A stretch of 64,000 bases of DNA from contig NIVC01002822.1 of assembly GCA_002269645.1 (NCBI GenBank), positions 74,043-138,042 on the forward strand, in the 5' to 3' direction. The notes under the pieces were generated by a model. The model was given only the letters and a program-made list of their open reading frames with translations, was not told where the DNA came from and did not search any database. Of this stretch, positions 29,501 through 63,765 are shown piece by piece; the first letter of the stretch is position 1; each line of letters starts with the position of its first letter. The DNA is from Macrostomum lignano. Its lineage: Eukaryota. The translations under genes were made by a program, and so were the position numbers.

Positions 29501-32500
29501 GTGCAGCTCGTCCTCGTCGGGATTGTAGTTGAACATGGCTTTCACGTAGATCTGGTGGGCGGTAGGTGTGGGCTTGGCTAATATGAACGGATGCACGCTA
29601 ACATTGCTACTGACACTAAGACTGTAAGTAGACAAAACGGTGGTTAGAAATTTATTCAAGATCATTCAGTTCAAATATTATTCAAACCAGAAAGGAGCAC
29701 TGATCACATTTGCAAGCTAACTAGCACTATTAAAGTAACATTAATTTTGCTACTAATTAGTCAACCTATGACATTAAAAAAGGTTTTTAAAAATAACAAC
29801 ATATTGGAAATGAACAGCAGAATTTCATGTTTATGCGCAGATGGGCGACATTTATAATGCATGGATTTAGTAGCACTACAATCATGAAGTGATATGGGAA
29901 ACTGACCCAGCAACTGAGGATCTGGGAGGCTGGCCCAGCAACTGAGGATCTGGGAGGCTGGCCCAGCAACTGAGGATCTGGGAGGCTGGCCCAGCAACTG
30001 AGGATCTGGGAGGCTGGCCCAGCAACTGAGGATCTGGGAGGCTGGCCCAGCAACTGAGGATCTGGGAAGCTGGCCCAGCAACTGAGGATCTGGGAGGCTG
30101 GCCCAGCAACTGAGGATCTGGGAGGCTGGCCCAGCAACTGAGGATCTGGGAGGCTGGCCCAGCAACTGAGGATCTGGGAGGCTGGCCCAGCAACTGAGGA
30201 TCTGGGAGGCTGGCCCAGCAACTGAGGATCTGGGAGGCTGGCCCAGCAACTGAGGATCTGGGAGGCTGGCCCAGAACTGAGGATCTGGGAGGTTGGCCCA
30301 GCAACTGAGGATCTGGGAGGCTGGCCCAGCAACTGAGGATCTGGGAGAGTGCCCAGTCGGTGAACACAGGACTCTGTGCATTCATGCGCAGATGGGCGAG
30401 CCTGATCTCGAACCCTGATTCTTACAGATTCCGGGACAGAAAAATTGCAGAATATACAATCATTGTGAATTATACGATTGGAATTTTAATGGGAAAACTA
30501 GACCAATTCACATGATTTAATGCTGTTTAGTATAAAAGAAAATCGAACTTGGTGCAGGGCTGTAAGATTTAGCAATTCAATCAGAGGTCGCACAACAGAA
30601 GCCAATAAGCGAGCAAAATTTTTATAACCATAAATTTCAACACGCGAAGAAGTTGATAAATGAAAGACTGAATTTTGTGAATTTATGAACGAGTGAAGTG
30701 GTGATTAGGCAAATTAGTGAACCCGTGAATGAATGTATCCATGAATGACTGAACCCATGAATGAGTGAAGCCGTGAATGAATGTATTAGTGAATGAGTGA
30801 ACCCATAAATGAATGAACTCGTGAATGAGTGAACTCGTGAATGAATGCATCCGTGAATGAATCAGTGAATAAGGTGAATGAGTGAAGCCATAAATGAGTG
30901 AACTCGTGAATGAATGCATCCGTGAATGAGTGAAATCGTGAATGAATGCATCCGTGAATGAGTGAACCCGTGAATGAACGTATTTATGAATGAATGCATC
31001 GTGAATGAGTGAAATCGTGAATGAATGCATCCGTGAATGAGTGAACCCGTGAATGAATGTATCCGTGAATGAATGTATTAGTGAATGAATGCATCCGTGA
31101 ATGAGTGAATTCGTGAATGAGTGAATTCGTGAATGAATGCATCCGTGAATGAGTGAAGCCATGAATGAGTGAACTCGTGAGTGAATGCATCCGTGAATGA
31201 GTGAACGAGGTGAATGAGTGAAGCCATGAATGAGTGAACTCGTGAGTGAATGCACCCGTGAATGTGATGGAATCCGTGATTGTTGGTATACCTCGCACTG
31301 CATTGGGTGATTTCGGTAGCTGGGTACAATTTTCAAAGTGACGCTGCCCCGAGCCTCTTTCTGAAATGTGTTTAGAAAATTAAAGTAATAAGCCTGTGAG
31401 TCACGACTCGATTGCATCTAAGAACTGAGCAGGGTCGCCTGCTGTTGCGGGAGCACTCCGATTAGCCAATAGGAAAACTGATTTCTTAGAAAAAGCGCAG
31501 TGTGGGAGAATAAACTAGAAAATATAGGCAATACTTGGAAATTATTAAAACAGCACTGCCTTCCGACCGATTTCACTGAGCTTGATCGCATGTACATAAT
31601 TTATGCACATTCCACACGATAATGCGCATGCTATATGTGTACAATGAAAATAATTTGTATACTGTCTATGATAATGCATACTTATATGTACATTGCTCAT
31701 GATAGTGTGTACAGGATATGCACATTGCTCATGATTATGTGTACAATGCATGCACATTGATCATGATCATGTGTACAGTACATGCAAATCGCTCATGATA
31801 ATGTATACAGTACATGCAAATCGCTCATGATAATGTGTACAGTGAATGTACATTGCTCATGATAATGTGTACAGTGTATGTACATTTCTCATGATTGTGT
31901 ACAGGACATGTACATTGCTCATGACAATGTGTACAGGACATGTAAATTGCTCATGATTATGTGTACAGTGAATGTACATTGCTCATGATAATGTGTACAG
32001 GACATGCACATTGCTCATGATTATGTGTACAATGCGTGCACATTGCTCATGATTATGTGTACGGGACATGCAAATCGCTCATGACAATATGTACAAAATT
32101 CATATCAGCAGTCGAAGATAAACAAACCATAATCAGAGCAAGTGAATTAAAAATGCTTTACAAAATGGAACAATGCACCAAAAGCCAAACACACTTATAA
32201 TTATTATCAATAAGGTGAGATATAAATTAACTAAATGATAAACTCTAACCAAGGCCCAATGTTAAGAGCAGTGGGGATAGAGTGCACTCAGAACCGTGAC
32301 TAGGATAAATAAGATAATGATTATATATTAGTGAGTGGCATAAACATCCTGTGAGACTTTAATAACCAAATCATATCAGGAGTCACTGGTTATTAAAGTG
32401 AATAAAATGTAGAAATTTATTGAAACAGCTATTGAATACATTCTCATTGCTGCAGTGCTGAATGCAAAAGCCATTCCATCGGACTGCGGAGTCCCATTGC

Positions 32501-35500
32501 ACAGCTTCAGCATCTGCTGTAGCAATTGTAAGCCAACTACATCACCAGCAGCTGGACAAAGCTGCTGCTTGCACTCACAGCTGCATCATCCATTGGTTAC
32601 TCACCTTGTACTGTCCACCTGCTTTGATTTCCCCTCTCTGTCTACTGTCTCCCTCACCTGTCTTACTGTCTTCCTTATCTGTCTTACTGTCTTCCTTATC
32701 TATCTTACTGTCTTCTTATCTGTCTTACTGTCTCCCTCACCTGTCTACTCTCTCCTTCACCTGTCTACTCTTCCCCTTATCCTGTCTACTCTCTCCCTAC
32801 CCTGTCTACTACTCCCTTCATCACCTGTCTACCTCTCATCCCACCTGTCTACCTCACCTGTTTACCCCACCTGTCTACTCTCACCCTACATGTCTACTCT
32901 CATCCCACCTGTCTATCTCTCTACCTCACCTGTCTACCTCTCTCACTCATGTCTACCTCTCTACCTCACCTGTCTACCTCTCTCACTCATGTCTACCTCT
33001 CTACCTCACCTGTCTACCTCTCTAACTCATGTTTACCTCTCTACCTCACCTGTCTACCTCTCTAACTCATGTTTACCTCTCTACCTCATCTGTCTACCTC
33101 TCTACCTCACTTGTCTACCTCTAACTCACCTGTATGCCTCTCTACCTCACCTGTGTACTTCTAACTCACCTGTCTACGCTTATCTCACCTATCTGCTTTC
33201 ATCCCACTTGTCTACTCTCATCGCACTTATCTACTCTAATCTCATCTGTCTACTCCCCCCACACAGACCTCACACACAGTAGCACATCAACCCGCACAAA
33301 GAAATCACCAAGTTTACCTCCTTGAACGATTGGCACACTGTCTTAGGCGCGCAAAGGCTTGGCACAATTTTTATCGTCACCATGCCGCGTAGAGATTTCT
33401 GCGAATTTAATAAACGCGATAGATAATAGCCTGTAGGTCAATGCTCCGGACACGCTACTGACAGTAGACAAAACAGCATATGTCAGAGACGTACTGCAGA
33501 AAATGAATATTTTCATTATTATAAACCGAGGCAAATGACTGAATCGGAGTGCTCTAATGAAGCTAATCTGACACAACTAATACAAAATAACACAAGCATT
33601 TAGGGGCCAAAGCTCACCAGCAGTCGCTGCAGAGCCTCAACGGACTGGCCAAGCACAGGCTCGCCATTGATTTCTCGAATCTCGTCGCCAACATGAAGCG
33701 TGCCTTGAAAATATTTTATAATAAAAACATAGAAATCGCGAACATCTTAGATACACTACTTAAAAGTAATGCTCGTTTCTTTAAATTGTTGTAAGAATTG
33801 AAAAACTTAAATTTTATTGCCTAAATGCTGTTGCCTGGATAGTAACTAATTTGGATTGGAATTACGAAAATCGGGGATCCGTGAATATGGGACTCAGTGA
33901 AGATTAGGGATCCGTGAATATGGGAGTCCGTGAAGATTTGGGATCCTTGAAAAGGAAAGTCCGTGAAGATAGGGTCCGTGAAGATTAAGAATCCGTGAAA
34001 ATTGAGGATCCGTGAAGATGGGATAAGTGAAGATGGGGATCCGAGTAGATTGAGGATCCGTGAAGATGCGAGTCCGAGAAGAAGATTGAAGATCCGTGAA
34101 GATGGGGATCCGTGAAGATTGAGGATCCGTGAAGATAGGGATCCGTGAAGATGGGGATCCGAGTAGATTGAGGATCCGTGAAGATGGGAGCCCAAGAAGA
34201 AGATTGAGGATTTGTGAAGATGGGGATCCGAGTAGATTGAGGATTTGTGAAGATGGGGATCCGAGTATATTGAGGATCCGTGAAGATGCGAGTCCGAGAA
34301 GAAGATTGAAGATCCGTGAAGATGGGGATCCGTGAAGATTGAGGATCCGTGAAGATGGGGATCCGAGTAGATTGAGGATCCGTGAAGATAGGGATCCGTG
34401 AAGATGGGGATCCGAGTAGATTGAGGATCCGTGAAGATAGGGATCCGTGAAGATGGGGATCCGAGAAGATTGAGGATCCGTGAAGATAGGGATCCGTGAA
34501 GATGGGGATCCGGGAAGATTGAGGATCCGTGAAGATGGGGATCCGTGAAGATGGGGATCCGTGAAGTTGGGGATCCGAGTAGATTGAGGATCCGTGAAGA
34601 TAGGGATCCGTGAAGATGGGGATCCGTGAAGTTTGGGATCCGTGAAGATGGGGATCCGTGAAGATAGTGATCCATGAAGATGGGGATCCATAAAGATGGG
34701 GACCCGTAAATTCGGATTTCAAAATCAAACGGCAATTTCCAGGAATTGAAACCCCCCTGCACTGCACAATCTAATCCTGTGAACGGCAGTCTTACCCTGC
34801 CTGTGAATCATGCCGCCGTGCATAATCCTGGCCACGATAATCTTGTTCTCCTCCGACATTTTCAGCGTGATGCCCTGCGCAGTGGAGCGGGGTGAACTGG
34901 TAAATGCGGTGCAGCAATCATGGCTAATGCGCTTTGCTTGTAGAAAACGCAAAAAGAAACGCAAAGTAAAGTGAAGGAGTGGTGGCTTAAGTTACAGTAT
35001 GCGCACAGGTAAAGAGACGTGCGAGTACAAGAGCTGTTTAGCATGTTGGGATTTGTGATTATCAATACACTACGAATGATCAGAACCTTTGAAAGTTAAG
35101 CAGAGCTGACAGCGGTTAGTAAACTCAGAATATTCTTATCAAAGTGCACCTGTTATCTATCTCAGCAGTTTGACAACTTGCTGAGCGGGAGTTGCACAGG
35201 TATACTCAGTCACTGAGTCACTCACTCAGTCACTCACTCATTCACTCACTCAGTCACTCATTCACTCACTCAGTCACTCACTCAGTCACTCATTCACTCA
35301 CTCACTCATTCACTCAGTCACTCACTCAGTCTCTCACTCACTCACACAATCCCCACTAGCTTAATTGTCCCTCTGCACAGCCATAAAAGTAAAACCGAAA
35401 ACCCACCATTGGCTCATTGGTGTTCTTCTGAAACTGCACCAGTCTGACTCGGGTGACATTGTCGGGTTCGGCGTCCAGGCCGCCTTCGTCGGCAACGTCA

Positions 35501-36452
35501 CCGTTCAGATAGGAGGACAGCGGCGGCGGGGTCACCCGGATGGCTTGGTCGCTGTACACGTCGTGGGCGAGCACGTCGTGGGCTTGAAGGAGCGCCTGCA
35601 GAGATAAGGGTAGGATTTAGTGGGAAATATAGGATTGGCTCTAGAGTTTTCTTTGAACATCATTTATTTAGCAGTCAGTATGTGGCGCCGATGAGAAACC
35701 AGTGTGGCGCCGATGGGGAAACCAGTGTGGCGCCGATGGGGAAACCAGTGTGGCGCCGATGGGGAAACCAGTGTGGTGCCGATAGGGAAGCCAGTGTGGC
35801 GCCGATGGGGAAGCCAGTGTGGCGCCTATAAGGAAACCAGTGTGGCGCCAAAAAGACAGCCAGTGTGGCGCCAAAAAGACAGCCAGTGTGGCGCCAACAG
35901 GGAAGCCAGTGTGGCGCCAACAGGGAAGTCAGTGTGGCGCTAATAAGGAAGCCAGTGTGAAGGCCAGAGCAATACTAATGTGAAAAAGCAATCACTGGCC
36001 GATACGAGGCTCTCCAGTGCATCGCCATTGCACACGGCTGCACCCGCTGATAACGATCGGGCACTGCTGCAGAGCAAGGCTTGCCAAAGCCACAAATTCT
36101 CAAAGTCAGTCAGCCAAAAATGTTCGGTCAAAATGCTAGTTAACTGACCTCAAGGCACTGCACTATTGTTAAAAAAATAATTTTATTCACTGTTGGCTCT
36201 CAACAATTCTGCACTACTTGCATTGGAGAACTTGTGGAAGCCTTCTGGGCTGGTGTTAATGGCTGGGAATATATGGTGGGAAAACAAACAAATAATGGAC
36301 TGACAGACGGACAGATAGACAGACAGACACTAAGACAGACAGACAGACAGACAGACAGACAGGCAGACAGACAGACAGATAGACACACAGACAGACAAAC
36401 AGACAGGCAGACACAGACAGACAGACAGACAGGCAGACAGACAGACAGACAC

Positions 36453-36483
<31 letters not shown>

Positions 36484-39400
36484 CACACAGACAGACAGAC
36501 AGGCAGACAGACAGGCAGACAGACAGACAGACAGACAGACAGGCAGATAGACAGACAGACAGACACAGGCAGGCGCTCACCCAGATGACGAGGTCATCCT
36601 TACTCAGCCCGCACTGCGTAAGCGCGGGGCGGCACCGCTCGCACTGGCAGAGCAGCTGGCCAGCTGCCTCGGGCTGCATCAAAATCCCCTGGCCGCTACT
36701 CAGGAGCAGCTCCGAATTCCGATTGATCGATCGCTGCTAAGCAAGGCCTATTCTGACAGCCAACAACTGAGCTTTCGGGTTTTTCCTACCTCAGGACCTG
36801 GCGCTGGGCAGCTCGGAATTTATGCGCGAGGAGGCGATTAGGAAGGGAGGGGGCGGGCCGGGACCCCCGATTCGCAGCAGAAGCGAATCGCGCAGAACAA
36901 GCGCAGCGCACGGCTGGGGAGTGGCCGGTGGGTCGAAGCGAAAAATCCCACGCGAAGCATACTTTTATTAATCCAATCTCTGCTGGATTAGCAACAGCAC
37001 ACAACTGCTGACAGGCAGCTGCGGCTCTCCCCGTTTCATCGGAATTTTCCTCTCTGCCTGCCAGCCAGTCAGTCAGTCAGTCAGTCAGTCAGTCAGTCAG
37101 TCAGTCAGTCAGTCAGTCAGTCAGTCAGCCAGTCAGTCAGTCAGTCAGTCAGTCAGTCAGTCAGTCAGTCAGTCAGTCAGTCAGTCAGTCAGTCAGTCAG
37201 TCAGTCAGTCAGTCAGTCAGTCAGTCAGTCAGTCAGTCAGTCAGTCAGTCAGTCAGTCAGTCAGTCAGTCAGTCAGTCAGTCAGTCAGTCAGTCAGTCAG
37301 TCAGTCAGTCAGTCAGTCAGTCAGTCACCCACTCACTCAAGTCAGTCAGTCAGTCAGTCAAATTCTACTCTCCCAATCGATCGAGCAGCCCAGACTCTGC
37401 AGGGCATTCATTTGGCAGAGGCGGTGTTGGGGAAAAGCCGGACACAGCACAGTCTGTCTGCATGCTGGCACGGAGAGACTCCCGCATTCAGAAAGATTAA
37501 TGCCCACAGGGGGAGAGACATGAAATTGTCAGTCTGCAGGCGCCGTGCCGGACCAGCCACTTGCGGGCTGCACACTCTTGCAGTTGTAAATTCTGCATAA
37601 AAAAGTGACAATAAAAGTTCCCAGGCACAGAAGTGGCTGGTGAAAAAACGCTAAAATGTTTTTGCAATTCGCGGATTCAAACTGCCTTTCTGCGGCCTGG
37701 AGCCATTTTGGCTGATGAAGGCGCACCAGTGTGAGAGAATGGGTGCCTGGGCATGCTGTGAGAGAATGGGTGCCTGGGCATGCTGTGAGAGAATGGGTGC
37801 CTGGGCATGCTGGAAGGAGGGGTATTTTAGGGCCACGGAAGCTGCATGGCGCCAAGAAGAGACATATTTTGGCGCAAAAGAGGCTGCGTAACGCCTAGAA
37901 GGGGTATTTTAGTACCAAGAACGAGTATTTTGGCGCCTAGAAGGGGTATTTTGGCGCCAAGCAAGAAGAGGTATTTTTATGCCAAGAAGGGGTATTTTGG
38001 CGCCAAGAGGCTGTCTAGCGCCAAGAAGGGGTATTTTGGCGCCAAGAAAGAAGGGGTATTTTGGCGCCAAGCAAGAAGGGGTATTTTTATGCCAAGAAGG
38101 GGTATTTTGGCGCTAAGAGGCTGTCTAGCGCCAAGAAGGGGTATTTTGGCGCCAAGAAAGAAGGGGTATTTTGGCGCCAAGAAAGAAGGGGTATTTTGGC
38201 GCCAAGAAAGAAGGGCTATTTTGGCGCCAAGAAAGAAGGGATATTTTGGCGCCAAGAAAGAAGGGATATTTTGGCGCCAAGAAAGGGATATTTTGGCGCT
38301 AAGAAAGGCTATTTTGGCGCCACGCAGACAGCGCGACACTGATAACTGACAATTCGATTCAGTGCGGCCTCAATTCTCCCTCATCGCCCGCACCCCGGCA
38401 GCTGCTCACCCTGAAGTGCGGCTGCAGCAGCAGCTCCCGCAGCTCCATGCAGTCGCTGTAGAACTCCCTGGAGCGGCACTGGCCGATGCTGTCGAGAACG
38501 TCCCGGCCGAGGCTGACCGCTTTGTCCGGGATCTGTCCGCGAATGGCCGAGCCGCTCAGATTGCGACTGTTGATGTGATCGTACAGCTGGGGAAGTGGCC
38601 GGGACGGGTTGAGGATCAGCTTTCGTAGTACACGATGCACTTTGTATTTACATTAAAACAGTTAGTCAATTAGATTAAAAAAACAATTTAATACTACAGT
38701 TCACTGAGGGAATTGAGAATGTGGCACTGGGAGAATTCAGAGTGTGGCCCTGAGGAAATTCAGAGTGTGGCACTGGGAGAATTCAGAGTGTGGCACTGAG
38801 GGAGTTCAGAGTGTGACACTAAGGGAATTCAGAGTGTGGCACGGAGGGAATTCAGAGTGCAGCACTGGGGAAATTCAGAGTGGCACTGGGAGAGTTCAGA
38901 GTGTGGCACTGGGGGGAATTCAGAGTGTGACACTAAGGGAATTCAGAGTGTGGCACGGAGGGAATTCAGAGTGCAGCACTGGGGAAATTCAGAGTGTAGC
39001 ACTGGGGGGATTCAGAATGTGGCATTGGGGGGATTCAGTGTGGCACTGGGGGAATTCAGAGTGTAGCACTGGGGGGATTCAGAATGTGGCATTGGGGGGA
39101 TTCAGTGTGGCACTGGGGGAATTCAGAGTGTGGCACTGGGGGAATTCAGAGTGTGGCACTGGGGGAATTCAGAGTGCGGCACGGGGAGAATTCAGAGTGC
39201 GGCACGGGGAGAATTCAGTGTGTGGCACTGGGGGAATTCAGAGTGCGGCACGGGGAGAATTCAGAGTGTGGCACTAAAGTATTCAATAGATTGCCTACAG
39301 TAGCCAGCAGCCTCCTACAGTGCAACAGATCTCATTCCCCTATCTGCACGAGATGCAAAGCAGCAGAAGGAGTCACTCGGACTCGAAGATGGGACAGACG

Positions 39401-61146: not shown

Positions 61147-63765
61147 TCTTATATACTAAATCTGAAAATGTTTGTAACTTTGTTTATAAGTTTCGCATCT
61201 CCTCTTGAACCACTTGGTAGATTTTCGTCAAATTTGTTTCATTCGATGTGGAATTCTACTGGGACCATGTGGTCTAATTTTCATTTTGATGTCGTAGTGT
61301 GAAGCCTCTCAAATTGGAGAAATACTGTATTTCGCCTATCTAATTAGTGTATTTTTCTCGCAGTCAGAGTTAAATTTTCAATTTTATATCTATGGTGGTC
61401 CGTGAAGTTGACTACGCGGCCGCAGCATCAGCAGCAGCAGCAGCGGCGGGTGGCACGAGACCAGCGTCCACGTCGCGCCCTGGACACCCCGCCAATGTGG
61501 CAGGAGCTCCGTGCGTCCCTGCCATCGACGGGGTGACGAATTGGTCTCACCTCCGGTATGCAGCCTGGGAGAGCTGTCCCCCAACGTTGGGTTGGCGGTG
61601 GATGGCGGTTTTTACAGCGTAAGTCGGTCTTCGGAGGAGCCCTGCGCACCGGGACTCGGGTCCCCACGCTCTCTGGCCACCCGCCGCAGGCCGCAAATTG
61701 GATTCCGCCGTCTACTGCCCGCCCGCGCAGGGTCAGCGCCCCGGCTGCATGGGGCTACGCCCCGGTCCTATTAGCTACGTCTAGCTACAATGTCCGTGAC
61801 CCGAAAAAGAAAGAAAGAAAGCAGCAGCGGCGGCTCGAGTCTAAATAAAGTCTTTCAATATATAAAGCTAATTATATAGTGTATTTTTCTCGCATTGATT
61901 TTATAACCTTGAAGTTCTTTAAGGTGAGTTCAACCGGTGAGTTCAACCGGTGAGTCTGTTCAACTTCGATTCATTCGTATTCGTGCTGGATTGGAGTGAT
62001 TTGTCTGATCTTCTGTTTGTTGTTCGATTATTTGTCGGCCTGAACCGGTTGACCGGTCTCAACAATTTCATGTGAATGTGTCTCTTAGTTTTTGATACCT
62101 GGGCGCGGGTGTGCTGTCGCTCATGCCGAAGAGGAAGCGAAAGAGTGAGTTAGTAAGAGTCGGGAAGCAAAATTGCGTCGTCGGCAGGAAACAGCGGAGG
62201 AGCGTAATTCGCGGCTTGAGAAACAACTAGAGTATAGTCGGAAGCGTATACAGAACGAATCCATAAGTGCACGGTCTGACAGGTTAGATGCCGCGCGTGT
62301 TCGCGCGGCTGAAAGGCGAGCTAATGAGTCAGACGCAGGGCGTTTCTCTCGATTGAACGCCGCACGTGCCCACGACGCCGATATGCGAGCTACTGAGACA
62401 GACGCAGCACGCGCCTCAAGATTGGATGCTGCGCGTGTTCGCGCTTCGAAACAACGTGCCACAGAGACTGACGCAGTGCGCGCAGACAGACGGGACGCAA
62501 TTGGTATTCATGTCGCTAATAAACGCGCTACAGAGACTGATGCTGTACGGCATATCCGTGGCGGATGTTGTGGCGACTTTCGGCAGCTGCTGCCGGTCGT
62601 AAAACATGGAACACGCGCAAACAATGTAATCGCCTGTGTAAGTCGATCAGCTCTGTGGTTAAGTTTCAAAGACATCACTTGACACGAAACATTCGACTTT
62701 TTAACAGTGGCTCTGTCGATCAATCGCAAACTGGTATGCTGAGTTTCTACTTCAGGTAAGTTACTTTCGAATTATTGAAAGCAGGATGTGACAGTGGGTC
62801 TCATACTCTACTCTATTTTGTTTCTAACCATTTTAGGTTGGCGAAGGTTCGATACCGAGTGATTCAGACGCCAATATCGTGCTACCACCCGAAATCGTTT
62901 TGCCTGGTGACGCTACTGTTGTTGATTTGATCCGGCTTGTATACCCAACGTTCGCTGGGATCGAAAACAGGAGAAGTTTTTTGAGAGCCGCGTCATTTTA
63001 GCTCCACTAAACGACTCCGTTGATAAAATTAACGATGCATGTTTAGATTTATTTCCAGGCGTTGATCGCGAATATAGATCAATTGACAGTGTCGAGGATG
63101 AGGATGACTTGACGCACTATCCACCTGAAGTGCTGAATAGTATGGACGCACCTGGATTGCCAAAGCATCGGCTTCGTCAATGCGGGATGCCTGTAGTTCT
63201 ACTACGAAACTTAAACCCACCACGACTGTGCAACGGAACACGATTAATCATTAAGGAATTGCGAAACAATATCTTACAATGTCAAATTGCTGCGGTCAAT
63301 TCAAAGGCGAAACAGTTTTGTTGCCGCGTACCATTGATACAAGTAATTTGGATCTACCTGTTAAGTTCAGAAGGCTACAATTTCCTCTACGACCTGTTTC
63401 TGCATGACTATTCATAAAGCACAAGGCCAATCCTTGACGTAGTTGGAATTGACCTTGCAGGTAGCTTTTTGCGCATGGACAGCTCTACACTGCACTTTCC
63501 AGAGCAAAAAATGTTTGTAATGTTCGAGTTCGAATGTGCGGCGAAAGAACCAAAAATATCGTTTACCCAGAAGTTTTTTGAATTGGACGTCTTTATTATC
63601 TATTAATAATTTTTTACAATTCAATTTAAAAAAAATATGTTGCTATTTTACTACGAGCCACGATTAATATGAAAGTGCATGCTGTCACGCAAAACGTCTA
63701 TGAGAAAATGTGTGTCCTGAAACTGTATTTTTCGCGGAATGCATAAGCTTGAGATGCATTTCTAG
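61147..63765 (+). mobile_element. Helitron (rolling-circle transposon), internally deleted and decayed; 3' end uncertain
   Basis: 5' A|TCTTATATACTAAA terminus at 61147; RepHel remnants inside. A weak hairpin+CTAG lies at 63738-63765, but the element may extend beyond the window. Confidence 0.75.
62123..63581 (+). pseudogene. Helitron RepHel remnant: NLS + 23-aa STPR-like repeats fused to C-terminal Pif1-family helicase
   Basis: MPKRKRK start; repeats such as RRANESDAGRFSRLNAARAHDAD; then GDFRQLLPVV, YAEFLLQ|VGEG (81-nt intron 62756-62836), ILAPLNDSVDKIN, LLRNLNPPRLCNGTRL, FRRLQFPL, TIHKAQGQSL, HGQLY, NIVYPEVF*; several frameshifts. Confidence 0.9.

What the first reader, a model, noticed from the sequence alone, without database searches (positions are those of the whole stretch)
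36581..37060. Internal Cys-rich first exon: a short, possibly palmitoylated CASK isoform lacking the kinase and L27 modules
Seen: ATG-initiated 33-codon exon ([33 protein letters not shown]) ending at TGG|gtgagc, in frame with exon 10. It has four Cys (CxCxxC..C), an upstream CpG-rich block with its own donor at 36790, and microsatellites on both sides. Established: Drosophila CASK makes a short CASK-alpha from an internal start without CaMK/L27 domains, and N-terminal Cys palmitoylation targets MAGUKs such as PSD-95 to membranes. Inference: an MPP1/p55-like PDZ-SH3-GuK isoform from the same locus, pointing to an ancient two-promoter design.
Basis: partly seen in the sequence, partly recalled or inferred. 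Interest (0 to 1): 0.74.

Follow-up and report, generated by a model that had tools for sequence, protein, structure and literature searches.

The report
Hidden alternative start exon in CASK
An intron of the flatworm Macrostomum lignano's CASK scaffold gene holds a small unannotated start exon, conserved in a sister gene copy, that would make a short protein without the kinase and L27 parts, a design already known from fruit flies; the proposed lipid anchor is not supported.

Summary
The sequence is as described. On the minus strand an ATG-initiated 33-codon ORF (36679-36581) ends at TGG|GTGAGC. It is in phase with the exon that starts at 35595 (ALLQAHD...). It lies in the 2.8-kb intron after the L27-2 exon of a CASK gene.

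The window is 100% identical to Macrostomum lignano contig NIVC01002822.1, where only full-length CASK (931 aa) is annotated.

The exon is probably real. A divergent M. lignano CASK paralog has, in the same intron, strand and phase, ATG CTG TGC GGC CAT CGA GAC GAT ATT GTC CTG TGG|GTAAGC (MLCGHRDDIVLW). The window reads ..[13 protein letters not shown]|GTGAGC. Each intron has exactly one ATG/phase-0/GTRAG candidate. These two are the top pair of 4795 (score 32, next 15), although fourfold sites are saturated and the introns do not align.

Only the last 11 codons are conserved. The CxCxxC part and the ATG are not: the window has ACG where the paralog has ATG.

The product has PDZ, SH3 and GuK but no kinase or L27, like Drosophila CASK-alpha. 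Arthropod short isoforms (MLCY|ALLQAHD) join at the same junction.

Palmitoylation, the CpG block and the 36790 donor are not supported. No RNA data could be checked. Verdict: a new member of a known kind, of moderate interest.

The parts
36581..36679 (-). ATG-initiated 33-codon ORF ([33 protein letters not shown]). This is the candidate alternative first coding exon as read by the first stage.
   Evidence: Sequence. Codon-usage LLR is +14.8, against an intron null with mean -18 (0.04% of null windows reach it). Against a local-composition null, frame 0 scores +3.5 and the other five frames score -1 to -19.
36581..36613 (-). Conserved core of the exon: TGC GGG CTG AGT AAG GAT GAC CTC GTC ATC TGG = [11 protein letters not shown].
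   Evidence: Homologous to L002 9434-9463 (CGHRDDIVLW) in intron 9 of paralog C. With the two codons just upstream (ACG CAG, 36619-36614; ATG CTG in L002), nucleotide identity is 22/36 and 9/12 residues are identical or conservative. K/R differ at all three codon positions, and G, D and D changes are synonymous. The pair ranks first of 4795 candidate pairs, 32 against 15.
36575..36580 (-). Splice donor GTGAGC of the candidate exon.
   Evidence: The same hexamer serves as the donor of canonical exon 9 and of two other CASK exons. Paralog C has GTAAGC at the same place. GT[G/A]AG is the species' donor motif. Outside the exon-9 donor there are only three GTRAG sites on the sense strand of this intron: this one, one inside the alternative exon (36603) and one at a microsatellite edge (37336).
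36614..36619 (-). ACG CAG, where paralog C has ATG CTG. The start codon is lost, and an AG (36615-36614) falls exactly on the codon boundary before the conserved Cys. This is a possible cis or spliced-leader acceptor.
   Evidence: The M. lignano spliced leader ends in ATG. Flatworm SL AUGs can initiate translation (PMC9851317). Use of this acceptor is inference only.
36680..36739 (-). Open frame upstream of the ATG (19 codons), bounded by TAG 36739-36737. It is a putative 5' UTR. The AG of that TAG is another possible acceptor.
   Evidence: There is no conservation with paralog C, where a TAA directly precedes the ATG.
36740..37061 (-). Unique sequence upstream of the ORF.
   Evidence: CpG o/e is about 0.93-1.07, not exceptional. 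There is no significant alignment to the paralog C upstream region and no colinear shared k-mers.
37062..37360 (.). (CAGT)n microsatellite, about 74 copies.
36298..36565 (.). (GACA)n microsatellite, about 68 copies.
38410..38586 (-). Canonical exon 9 (LYDHINSRN...LLLQPHFR), encoding the first two thirds of L27-2. Its donor is GTGAGC and it ends in phase 0.
   Evidence: L27 hit when joined to exon 10. Present in the annotated protein P0304.
35407..35595 (-). Exon 10 (ALLQAHDV...NTNEPM): the last L27-2 helix, a linker and the start of the PDZ domain. It would be the acceptor exon for both exon 9 and the candidate exon.

Best explanation
The finding is a genuine, unannotated alternative 5' coding exon of Macrostomum lignano CASK (paralog Mlig028881). 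It lies in the intron between the L27-2 exon and the ALLQAHD exon.

A transcript that starts upstream of it, within the unique 0.5-kb island between two microsatellites, would be translated from ATG 36679 and spliced from 36581 to 35595. The product is a roughly 505-aa protein: a 33-aa leader, the orphan last helix of L27-2, then PDZ, SH3-HOOK and GuK.

By established CASK biology, such a protein lacks the CaMK domain (Mint/liprin binding) and the L27 pair (Veli/Lin-7 and SAP97 binding). It would therefore act as an MPP1/p55-like or CASK-alpha-like scaffold, keeping its PDZ and GuK partners but staying outside the tripartite complex.

Shown: the anatomy, the phase, the domain content, and conservation of the last 11 codons plus the donor in a paralog.
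Inferred: transcription, the start site, which codon starts translation, and the function.
A lipid anchor is not part of this explanation.
For: 1. The ORF, donor and phase are as described.
2. The window equals M. lignano contig NIVC01002822.1, and the gene is CASK.
3. Paralog C (L002, L005, L006) carries ATG CTG TGC GGC CAT CGA GAC GAT ATT GTC CTG TGG|GTAAGC in the homologous intron. It is preceded by an in-frame TAA and lies 281 nt upstream of exon 10.
4. Each intron has exactly one ATG/phase-0/GTRAG candidate. Their anchored tail score is 32, against a next best of 15 (mean -7.5, sd 6.9, 4795 pairs).
5. Neutral sites are saturated between the two paralogs: 14/33 fourfold sites are identical, and the introns are unalignable. 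The substitutions in the exon are synonymous or conservative.
6. Codon usage favours frame 0 over the other five frames.
7. The product has PDZ, SH3 and GuK, with only a sub-threshold L27 remnant.
8. The same junction is used by Drosophila CASK-alpha-type isoforms, pancrustacean MLCY|ALLQAHD isoforms, spider isoforms and a cephalopod transcript.
Against: - No transcript, TSS or junction evidence could be accessed.
- The transcriptome-based GenBank models at this locus and at paralog C use exon 9 to exon 10 only. None of the 422 proteins retrieved contains the peptide.
- The ATG of paralog C corresponds to ACG in the window, and the 21 codons upstream of it have no counterpart in paralog C.
- Paralog B lacks the exon altogether.
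- Conservation rests on two deep lineages only. L002, L005 and L006 are about 99-100% identical to each other.
- The upstream region shows no conserved promoter-like block and no outstanding CpG signal.
Confidence: 0.45

Rival explanations
1. The exon is real, but in this paralog neither the transcript nor the protein starts where the reader thought.

The spliced leader, which ends in ...TTGCATG, would be trans-spliced to the AG at 36615-36614 (ACG CAG|TGC). It would donate the AUG, giving a 12-aa leader, [12 protein letters not shown]. That is the same length as paralog C's MLCGHRDDIVLW, with a Cys next to the initiator Met.

No internal promoter is needed, because the short mRNA would be cut out of the long CASK pre-mRNA.
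For: - The window has ACG CAG where paralog C has ATG CTG. The start codon is lost and a CAG acceptor is created exactly on the codon boundary before the conserved Cys.
- The M. lignano SL ends in ATG and about 30% of genes are SL trans-spliced (PMC8629364).
- Flatworm SL AUGs serve as initiators (PMC9851317).
- The upstream tract ccgccccgcgcttacgcag resembles the CGCAG-type acceptors of canonical CASK exons.
- The paralog-C 'partial' models P0123 and P0302 begin exactly at the first base of exon 11. This hints at internal trans-splicing in CASK.
Against: - The site does not match the most enriched SL-acceptor motif [T/C]TNCAG.
- An AG on that boundary has about a 6% chance expectation.
- The 21 codons that this model treats as outron score as coding-like.
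- No SL reads could be examined.
Confidence: 0.2
2. The exon is a relic. It was, and in paralog C may still be, a functional first exon, but the window copy lost its ATG (now ACG) and is decaying. The upstream in-frame ATG and open frame are fortuitous in GC-rich sequence.
For: - ATG has become ACG at the homologous position, and the upstream 21 codons have no counterpart.
- Paralog B has lost the exon completely, so loss is tolerated.
- My rough estimate is a 20-30% chance of an in-frame ATG with no stop in about 60% GC sequence. This was not computed with a tool.
Against: - The 11 codons after the lost ATG still show conservative or synonymous change, and the donor is intact, despite saturated neutral divergence.
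- The frame is open for 52 codons, and frame 0 has the best codon usage of the six frames.
Confidence: 0.12
3. It is not an exon. The ORF is a chance product of GC-rich unique intron sequence, and the short match to paralog C reflects chance or a conserved non-coding element, for example a splicing or transcriptional regulator of CASK.
For: - The match is short (11-12 codons; tblastn E = 0.5 on its own).
- There is no nucleotide-level similarity in the flanks.
- No annotation or transcript supports it.
Against: - It is the top pair of 4795 by a wide margin, and it is the only GTRAG-ended ATG ORF in each intron.
- The similarity ends exactly at a consensus donor, in the same phase and on the same strand.
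- The substitution pattern is that of a translated sequence: 61% nucleotide identity but 9/12 similar residues.
Confidence: 0.13
4. It is an internal cassette exon of full-length CASK, spliced in cis from exon 9. It would be either a 33-nt microexon (36613-36581, inserting [11 protein letters not shown]) or a 156-nt exon (36736-36581). Either would insert residues into L27-2.
For: Both versions are in frame and free of stops in the window, and AG dinucleotides lie at 36615-36614 and 36738-36737.
Against: - Paralog C has no AG at the equivalent boundary.
- Paralog C has a TAA directly upstream of the conserved codons. The only nearby upstream AG there gives a 59-nt, frame-breaking exon.
- A coding cassette therefore cannot be the conserved function.
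Confidence: 0.05

Closest known systems
Drosophila CASK-alpha (the short, MPP1-like products of the Cask/caki locus; Slawson et al. 2011, as summarised in PMC4075472)
   Same: - One CASK gene gives a full-length CaMK-L27-L27-PDZ-SH3-GuK protein and a short protein with a brief unique N-terminus that lacks CaMK and L27.
- In the drosophilid isoform retrieved here, the unique part ends exactly before the ALLHTHD exon, which is the same junction as in the window (P0236).
   Different: - The fly N-terminal region (..WIG.ET..LPPH..YY..) is longer and unrelated in sequence.
- In the fly, independent transcription start sites and a genetic separation of the two classes have been shown.
[quoted passage not shown]
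Pancrustacean 'MLCY' short CASK isoforms (RefSeq and GenBank predictions for Schistocerca, Cardiocondyla, Cataglyphis, Macrobrachium, Penaeus, Cherax, Scylla and Oratosquilla)
   Same: - A mini first coding exon lies a few hundred bp upstream of the ALLQAHD exon: 520 nt in Cataglyphis (L003), 281 nt in M. lignano paralog C, and 985 nt in the window.
- Paralog C also begins M-L-C.
- All of them place hydrophobic or aromatic residues directly before ALLQ (MLCY|ALL, IVLW|ALL, LVIW|ALL).
   Different: - The arthropod exon codes 4 aa (7 in Cataglyphis), against 12 or 33 in the flatworm.
- The window copy reads TQC, not MLC.
- Spiders, other insects and a cephalopod use unrelated N-termini at the same junction, so homology of the exons across phyla is not established. 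A three-residue match is a lead only.
Vertebrate MPP1/p55 (membrane palmitoylated protein 1)
   Same: - The domain content of the predicted short product is PDZ-SH3-GuK without CaMK or a working L27.
- MPP1 is a palmitoylated MAGUK (PMC8470630).
   Different: - MPP1 is a separate gene, not an isoform of CASK.
- The paper read describes palmitate attachment to internal cysteine residues, not to an N-terminal motif.
- No sequence relation to the leader was seen. I compared it only with the human MPP1 sequence recalled from memory; no tool was run.
N-terminal palmitoylation motifs of PSD-95 (Cys3, Cys5) and GAP-43 (MLCCM)
   Same: - Cysteines lie near a MAGUK N-terminus.
- Paralog C (MLCG) and the arthropod form (MLCYALL) have Cys3, as GAP-43 does.
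   Different: - The motif requires five consecutive hydrophobic residues that include the Cys (PMC2156213).
- The window leader has [10 protein letters not shown] and TQCGL, and none of these fits.
- Its first Cys is residue 11.
- Three of its four Cys have no counterpart in paralog C.

Membership tests
CASK (MAGUK with an N-terminal CaMK domain) | The gene encodes CaMK-like kinase, two L27 domains, PDZ, SH3 and guanylate-kinase-like domains in that order. | tested here: met
   tblastn maps all parts on the minus strand from 58956 to 26397. The annotated product P0304 (931 aa; 98% identical to my approximate model, C-terminal half identical) carries Pkinase, L27, PDZ and Guanylate_kin. SH3 is found in my own scan.
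CASK-alpha-type short isoform (internal start) | An alternative 5' exon lies in the intron upstream of the exon encoding the last L27-2 helix, with an in-frame start and a usable donor. | tested here: met
   ATG 36679 ... TGG|GTGAGC, phase 0 into 35595. It is the only such candidate in the intron.
CASK-alpha-type short isoform (internal start) | The product lacks CaMK and functional L27 domains but keeps PDZ, SH3 and GuK. | tested here: met
   Pfam scan of the conceptual 505-aa product finds PDZ, SH3 and Guanylate_kin. The only L27 signal is sub-threshold (14.3 bits against a cut-off of 22) and covers the last helix only.
CASK-alpha-type short isoform (internal start) | An independent transcription start or transcript containing the exon joined to the downstream exon. 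| not testable with these tools
   No eukaryotic RNA-seq or CAGE resource was available.
CASK-alpha-type short isoform (internal start) | Evolutionary conservation of the exon as coding sequence. | tested here: met
   Met for the last 11 codons plus the donor, between paralogs A and C. Not met for codons 1-21 or for the ATG. The exon is absent from paralog B.
N-terminally palmitoylated MAGUK (PSD-95/GAP-43-type motif) | Cysteine(s) lie within the first few residues, embedded in five consecutive hydrophobic residues. | tested here: not met
   The rule comes from PMC2156213. In the window leader the Cys are at positions 11, 13, 16 and 23, in the contexts [10 protein letters not shown] and TQCGL. 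Paralog C (MLCGHR) meets the position requirement but not the hydrophobic run.
N-terminally palmitoylated MAGUK (PSD-95/GAP-43-type motif) | Thioester-linked palmitate demonstrated on the protein. | not testable with these tools
   This needs acyl-biotin exchange or metabolic labelling.
CpG-island-type internal promoter | The upstream block stands out from the local background in CpG o/e and GC. | tested here: not met
   CpG o/e is 0.93 for 36680-37060 and 1.07 for the core. That is the 70th-83rd percentile of 492 unique 300-bp windows, and CASK exons range from 0.68 to 1.22.
MPP1/p55 orthologue | A separate gene that encodes only the PDZ-SH3-GuK architecture. | tested here: not met
   The exons downstream of 35595 are the C-terminal exons of the annotated full-length CASK at the same locus.

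The most novel reading that the evidence does not exclude
The mini-exon may be an ancestral protostome feature. On this reading, a first exon coding M-L-C-...-aromatic lay a few hundred bp upstream of the ALLQAHD exon before flatworms and arthropods split. It survives as MLCY in pancrustaceans and as MLCGHRDDIVLW in M. lignano paralog C, and it gives a Cys-anchored, MPP1-like CASK isoform.

In the window's paralog the genomic start codon would then have been replaced by the AUG of the spliced leader (ACG CAG|TGC giving SL-AUG+[11 protein letters not shown]). That would be a documented case of a gene handing its initiator codon over to trans-splicing.
Probability: 0.15. Interest if true: 0.65.

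Novelty: new member of a known kind. Interest (0 to 1): 0.45.

Why it matters
CASK is a central synaptic and epithelial scaffold. Its N-terminal kinase and L27 modules decide whether it joins the Mint/Veli complex.

In flies a short isoform from the same locus has separate genetic roles. Whether that two-product design is a fly peculiarity or a general property of the gene has not been clear.

This is evidence that a flatworm keeps a protein-coding start exon at exactly the same intron, under selection in two old gene copies. It extends the design to Lophotrochozoa. It also flags an unannotated isoform in a regeneration model that has transgenesis.

The case can also test whether internal spliced-leader trans-splicing, rather than a second promoter, can generate domain-truncated isoforms.

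It does not establish lipid anchoring.

Tried and rejected
- Rfam scan of the whole window: nothing.
- Search for other copies of the 0.5-kb island in the window: none, so it is not a repeat or transposable element.
- Search for the 33-aa peptide in 422 retrieved CASK-family proteins, and by tblastn in eight related loci: the only hit is the paralog-C element.
- Nucleotide alignment of the upstream regions of paralogs A and C: the score is at the shuffle null. Shared 8-mers are not colinear.
- A 28-nt block (window 36278-36251 against L002 9321-9348, 82% identity) lies on opposite sides of the exon in the two loci, so I treated it as chance.
- CpG-island reading: rejected.
- Homeologs L002, L005 and L006 are too similar (99-100%) to add information.
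- P0122 and P0183 are not on record for locus retrieval.
- Reading the g1/g2 suffixes of the GenBank locus tags (BOX15_Mlig017014g1/g2) as 'cut transcriptional units' was dropped once the two models turned out to lie on different contigs.
- The 16-bp palindrome in the ORF was considered as an E-box pair or a hairpin, but about one such palindrome is expected per 64 kb.
- Structure prediction of the leader was not run, because two homologous sequences give no useful alignment.
Full report
OBSERVATION

On the minus strand the window reads gATG CAG CCC GAG ... ATC TGG|gtgagc. The ATG is at 36679-36677 and the last codon is at 36583-36581. That makes 33 codons, [33 protein letters not shown], with Cys at positions 11, 13, 16 and 23. 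The frame is open upstream to TAG at 36739-36737.

The next exon starts at 35595 after ctctgcag| and reads [25 protein letters not shown]...NTNEPM|gtgggt. The splice would therefore be phase 0 to phase 0.

The unique island holding the ORF (about 36566-37061) is bracketed by (GACA)n at 36298-36565 and (CAGT)n at 37062-37360.

CONTEXT

Canonical exon 9 is 38586-38410 (LYDHINSRN...LLLQPHFR|gtgagc). Joined to exon 10 it gives a Pfam L27 hit. The candidate therefore lies in the 2.8-kb intron between the L27-2 exon and the exon that carries the last L27-2 helix and the start of the PDZ domain.

The window is 100% identical over 35 kb to Macrostomum lignano contig NIVC01002822.1 of assembly GCA_002269645.1 (L008). 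The only product annotated there is the 931-aa full-length CASK, BOX15_Mlig028881g1 (P0304). Its C-terminal 472 residues are identical to my exon model.

Tandem repeats fill 46% of the gene span, so the flanking microsatellites carry no information.

The upstream 'CpG-rich block' has CpG o/e 0.93-1.07. That is the 70th-83rd percentile of unique 300-bp windows and no higher than the CASK exons. The proposed upstream donor at 36790 is GAG|GTAGGA, which does not match the species' GT[G/A]AG donor motif. Rfam finds nothing in the window, and the island has no other copy in the window.

IS THE EXON MORE THAN CHANCE?

M. lignano has at least three old CASK paralog families:
- A is the window (Mlig028881).
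- B is Mlig029367/005720 (P0305, P0121; loci L007, L001).
- C is Mlig003891/017014 (P0303, P0123, P0302; loci L005, L002, L006).

A is about 81% identical to B (full length), and about 76% identical to C in its C-terminal half.

Intron 9 of paralog C, on the sense strand and 281 nt upstream of exon 10, reads ...tttttatTAA ATG CTG TGC GGC CAT CGA GAC GAT ATT GVC-equivalent codons GTC CTG TGG|GTAAGC, that is MLCGHRDDIVLW (L002 9428-9463). The same sequence is present in L005 and L006. The window has ACG CAG TGC GGG CTG AGT AAG GAT GAC CTC GTC ATC TGG|GTGAGC.

I enumerated every ATG-initiated, phase-0 ORF that ends at any GT in the three introns. This gave 36, 114 and 24 candidates. Exactly one per intron ends at GTRAG in A and in C, and none does in B. 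These two form the best of 4795 pairs by anchored BLOSUM62 tail score: 32 against a next best of 15 (mean -7.5, sd 6.9).

Neutral divergence between A and C is saturated. Only 14/33 fourfold sites are identical in exons 10-11. The introns and the regions upstream of the element do not align.

Within the element, nucleotide identity is 22/36, yet 9 of 12 residues are identical or conservative. Lys/Arg differ at all three codon positions, Leu/Ile and Ile/Leu are swapped, and Gly, Asp and Asp changes are synonymous. That is the signature of a translated sequence that ends at a used donor.

Codon usage gives weaker support.
- Against unique intron sequence, the 33 codons score +14.8, where stop-free intron windows average -18 (0.04% reach it).
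- Against the local base composition, frame 0 scores +3.5 and the other five frames score -1 to -19.
- The stretch upstream of the ATG scores similarly, so this signal does not fix the start.

WHAT IS NOT CONSERVED

Only the last 11 codons and the donor are shared. Paralog C has a TAA immediately before its ATG, so nothing corresponds to the window's first 21 codons, including the CxCxxC cluster. Where C has ATG CTG, the window has ACG CAG.

Paralog B has a 0.9-1.1-kb intron 9 made almost wholly of a 37-bp minisatellite, with no trace of the element.

None of the 422 CASK-family proteins retrieved contains the peptide. The transcriptome-based GenBank models for A and C splice exon 9 to exon 10.

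I could not reach any RNA data.

HOW IT MOST LIKELY WORKS

Spliced to exon 10, the ORF gives a 505-aa protein with PDZ, SH3 and guanylate-kinase domains. Its only L27 signal is a sub-threshold remnant of the last helix.

From established CASK biology (my knowledge, not tested here), such a protein cannot bind Mint or liprin through the CaMK domain, nor Veli/Lin-7 and SAP97 through the L27 pair. It keeps the PDZ, HOOK and GuK interactions. That makes it an MPP1/p55-like scaffold.

The conserved residues put a hydrophobic run across the junction (LVIW|ALL, IVLW|ALL). What that does is unknown.

Three readings of the 5' end remain open.
(i) An own start site in the island, with ATG 36679.
(ii) Spliced-leader trans-splicing to the AG at 36615-36614, which sits exactly on the codon boundary before the conserved Cys. 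The M. lignano SL ends in ATG (PMC8629364), and flatworm SL AUGs can initiate translation (PMC9851317). This would give [12 protein letters not shown], 12 residues like paralog C, and it would explain the ATG-to-ACG and CTG-to-CAG changes together.
(iii) The window copy is a decaying relic.

A coding cassette exon is unlikely to be the conserved function, because paralog C has no acceptor in frame and has a stop directly upstream.

COMPARISON WITH WHAT IS KNOWN

The Drosophila statement is correct. The Cask gene gives CASK-beta (full length) and CASK-alpha from two start sites. CASK-alpha has a short unique N-terminus, lacks CaMK and L27, and is MPP1-like (PMC4075472).

In my searches many arthropod isoforms begin with a lineage-specific N-terminus joined exactly before ALLQAHD.
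- MLCY|ALLQAHD occurs in several Schistocerca species, an ant, and decapod and stomatopod crustaceans.
- MLCKKSY| occurs in Cataglyphis, where the exon lies 520 nt upstream of the ALLQAHD exon and the L27 exon is more than 10 kb away (L003).
- A ..WIGEETKR.. class includes the drosophilid form.
- Spiders have other N-termini.
- A 1.8-kb cephalopod transcript contig reads MYL|SLLQAHD after a 5' region that does not code for L27.

The junction is therefore widely used for internal starts in protostomes. The M. lignano exon is a new, unannotated member of that kind.

Paralog C's MLC start matches the pancrustacean MLCY. That is a three-residue resemblance and the window copy does not share it, so I treat it as a lead and not as homology.

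PALMITOYLATION

PSD-95 and GAP-43 need five consecutive hydrophobic residues that include the modified Cys near the N-terminus (PMC2156213). The window leader offers [10 protein letters not shown] and TQCGL, with the first Cys at residue 11. Three of its four Cys are not conserved.

MPP1 is indeed palmitoylated (PMC8470630), but that says nothing about this leader.

The arthropod MLCYALL would fit the rule better than the flatworm sequence does. Palmitoylation of the window's product is therefore unsupported. I put it at roughly 0.15-0.2.

VERDICT

- The exon is probably real. All readings in which it is or was an exon sum to about 0.8.
- The specific 33-aa Cys-rich reading has a probability of about 0.45.
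- The lipid-anchor, CpG-promoter and upstream-donor elements are not supported.
- Novelty: a new member of a known kind.
- Interest: moderate.

Noticed in passing
window 33318-33398 (-) versus 31292-31360 (-): The exon for the PDZ C-terminal strand is duplicated. [27 protein letters not shown] (ag|...|gtaaac, phase 0/0) lies 2 kb upstream of the constitutive [23 protein letters not shown]. The annotated full-length proteins use only the second. The paralog-C partial models (P0123, P0302) and the UniRef model P0122 contain both. This is probably an alternative or mutually exclusive exon that is conserved among the paralogs.
   Followed up: partly
L002 10001 and L006 10001 (paralog C, exon 11): The GenBank 'partial' models P0123 and P0302 start exactly at the first base of exon 11 (after ttgtag|GGAATC). 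A transcript 5' end at an acceptor suggests internal spliced-leader trans-splicing in CASK. The SL's terminal ATG would be in frame (M+GITLKM...), giving a PDZ domain that lacks its first strand.
   Followed up: no
window 36614-36619 (-): The window has ACG CAG|TGC where paralog C has ATG CTG TGC. The start codon is lost, and an AG is created on the codon boundary before the conserved Cys. This is compatible with an SL-donated AUG or with a 33-nt in-frame microexon.
   Followed up: partly
window 36652-36667: A perfect 16-bp palindrome, GCAGCTGGCCAGCTGC, lies inside the ORF. It contains two CAGCTG E-boxes and could form a 6-bp stem with a 4-nt loop, starting 13 nt after the A of the ATG. About one such palindrome is expected by chance in 64 kb.
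   Followed up: no
window 62173-62682 (+): This ORF has an STPR-repeat region and a PIF1-like helicase fragment (PF05970, E = 7e-8, ...GDFRQLLPVV...). It is probably a Helitron-type transposon remnant upstream of CASK.
   Followed up: partly
L001 9891-10066 versus L007 21023-21199: Exon 9 of paralog-B copy Mlig005720 is 176 nt, against 177 nt in its homeolog Mlig029367. This is a frameshift or an assembly error. It explains why P0121 starts at an internal Met (MSRDFLADC...).
   Followed up: partly
window, whole CASK span 26397-58956: Nearly every intron is packed with minisatellites (periods 11-47 bp; arrays of up to 1.4 kb inside the gene and 3.3 kb just outside it) and tetranucleotide arrays. 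Tandem repeats make up 46% of the gene. The arrays differ between paralogs, and only the exons and the mini-exon align.
   Followed up: partly
window 36603 (-): A second GTAAG lies inside the candidate exon (CTGA|GTAAGG). It would be out of frame with exon 10 if it were used as a donor.
   Followed up: no
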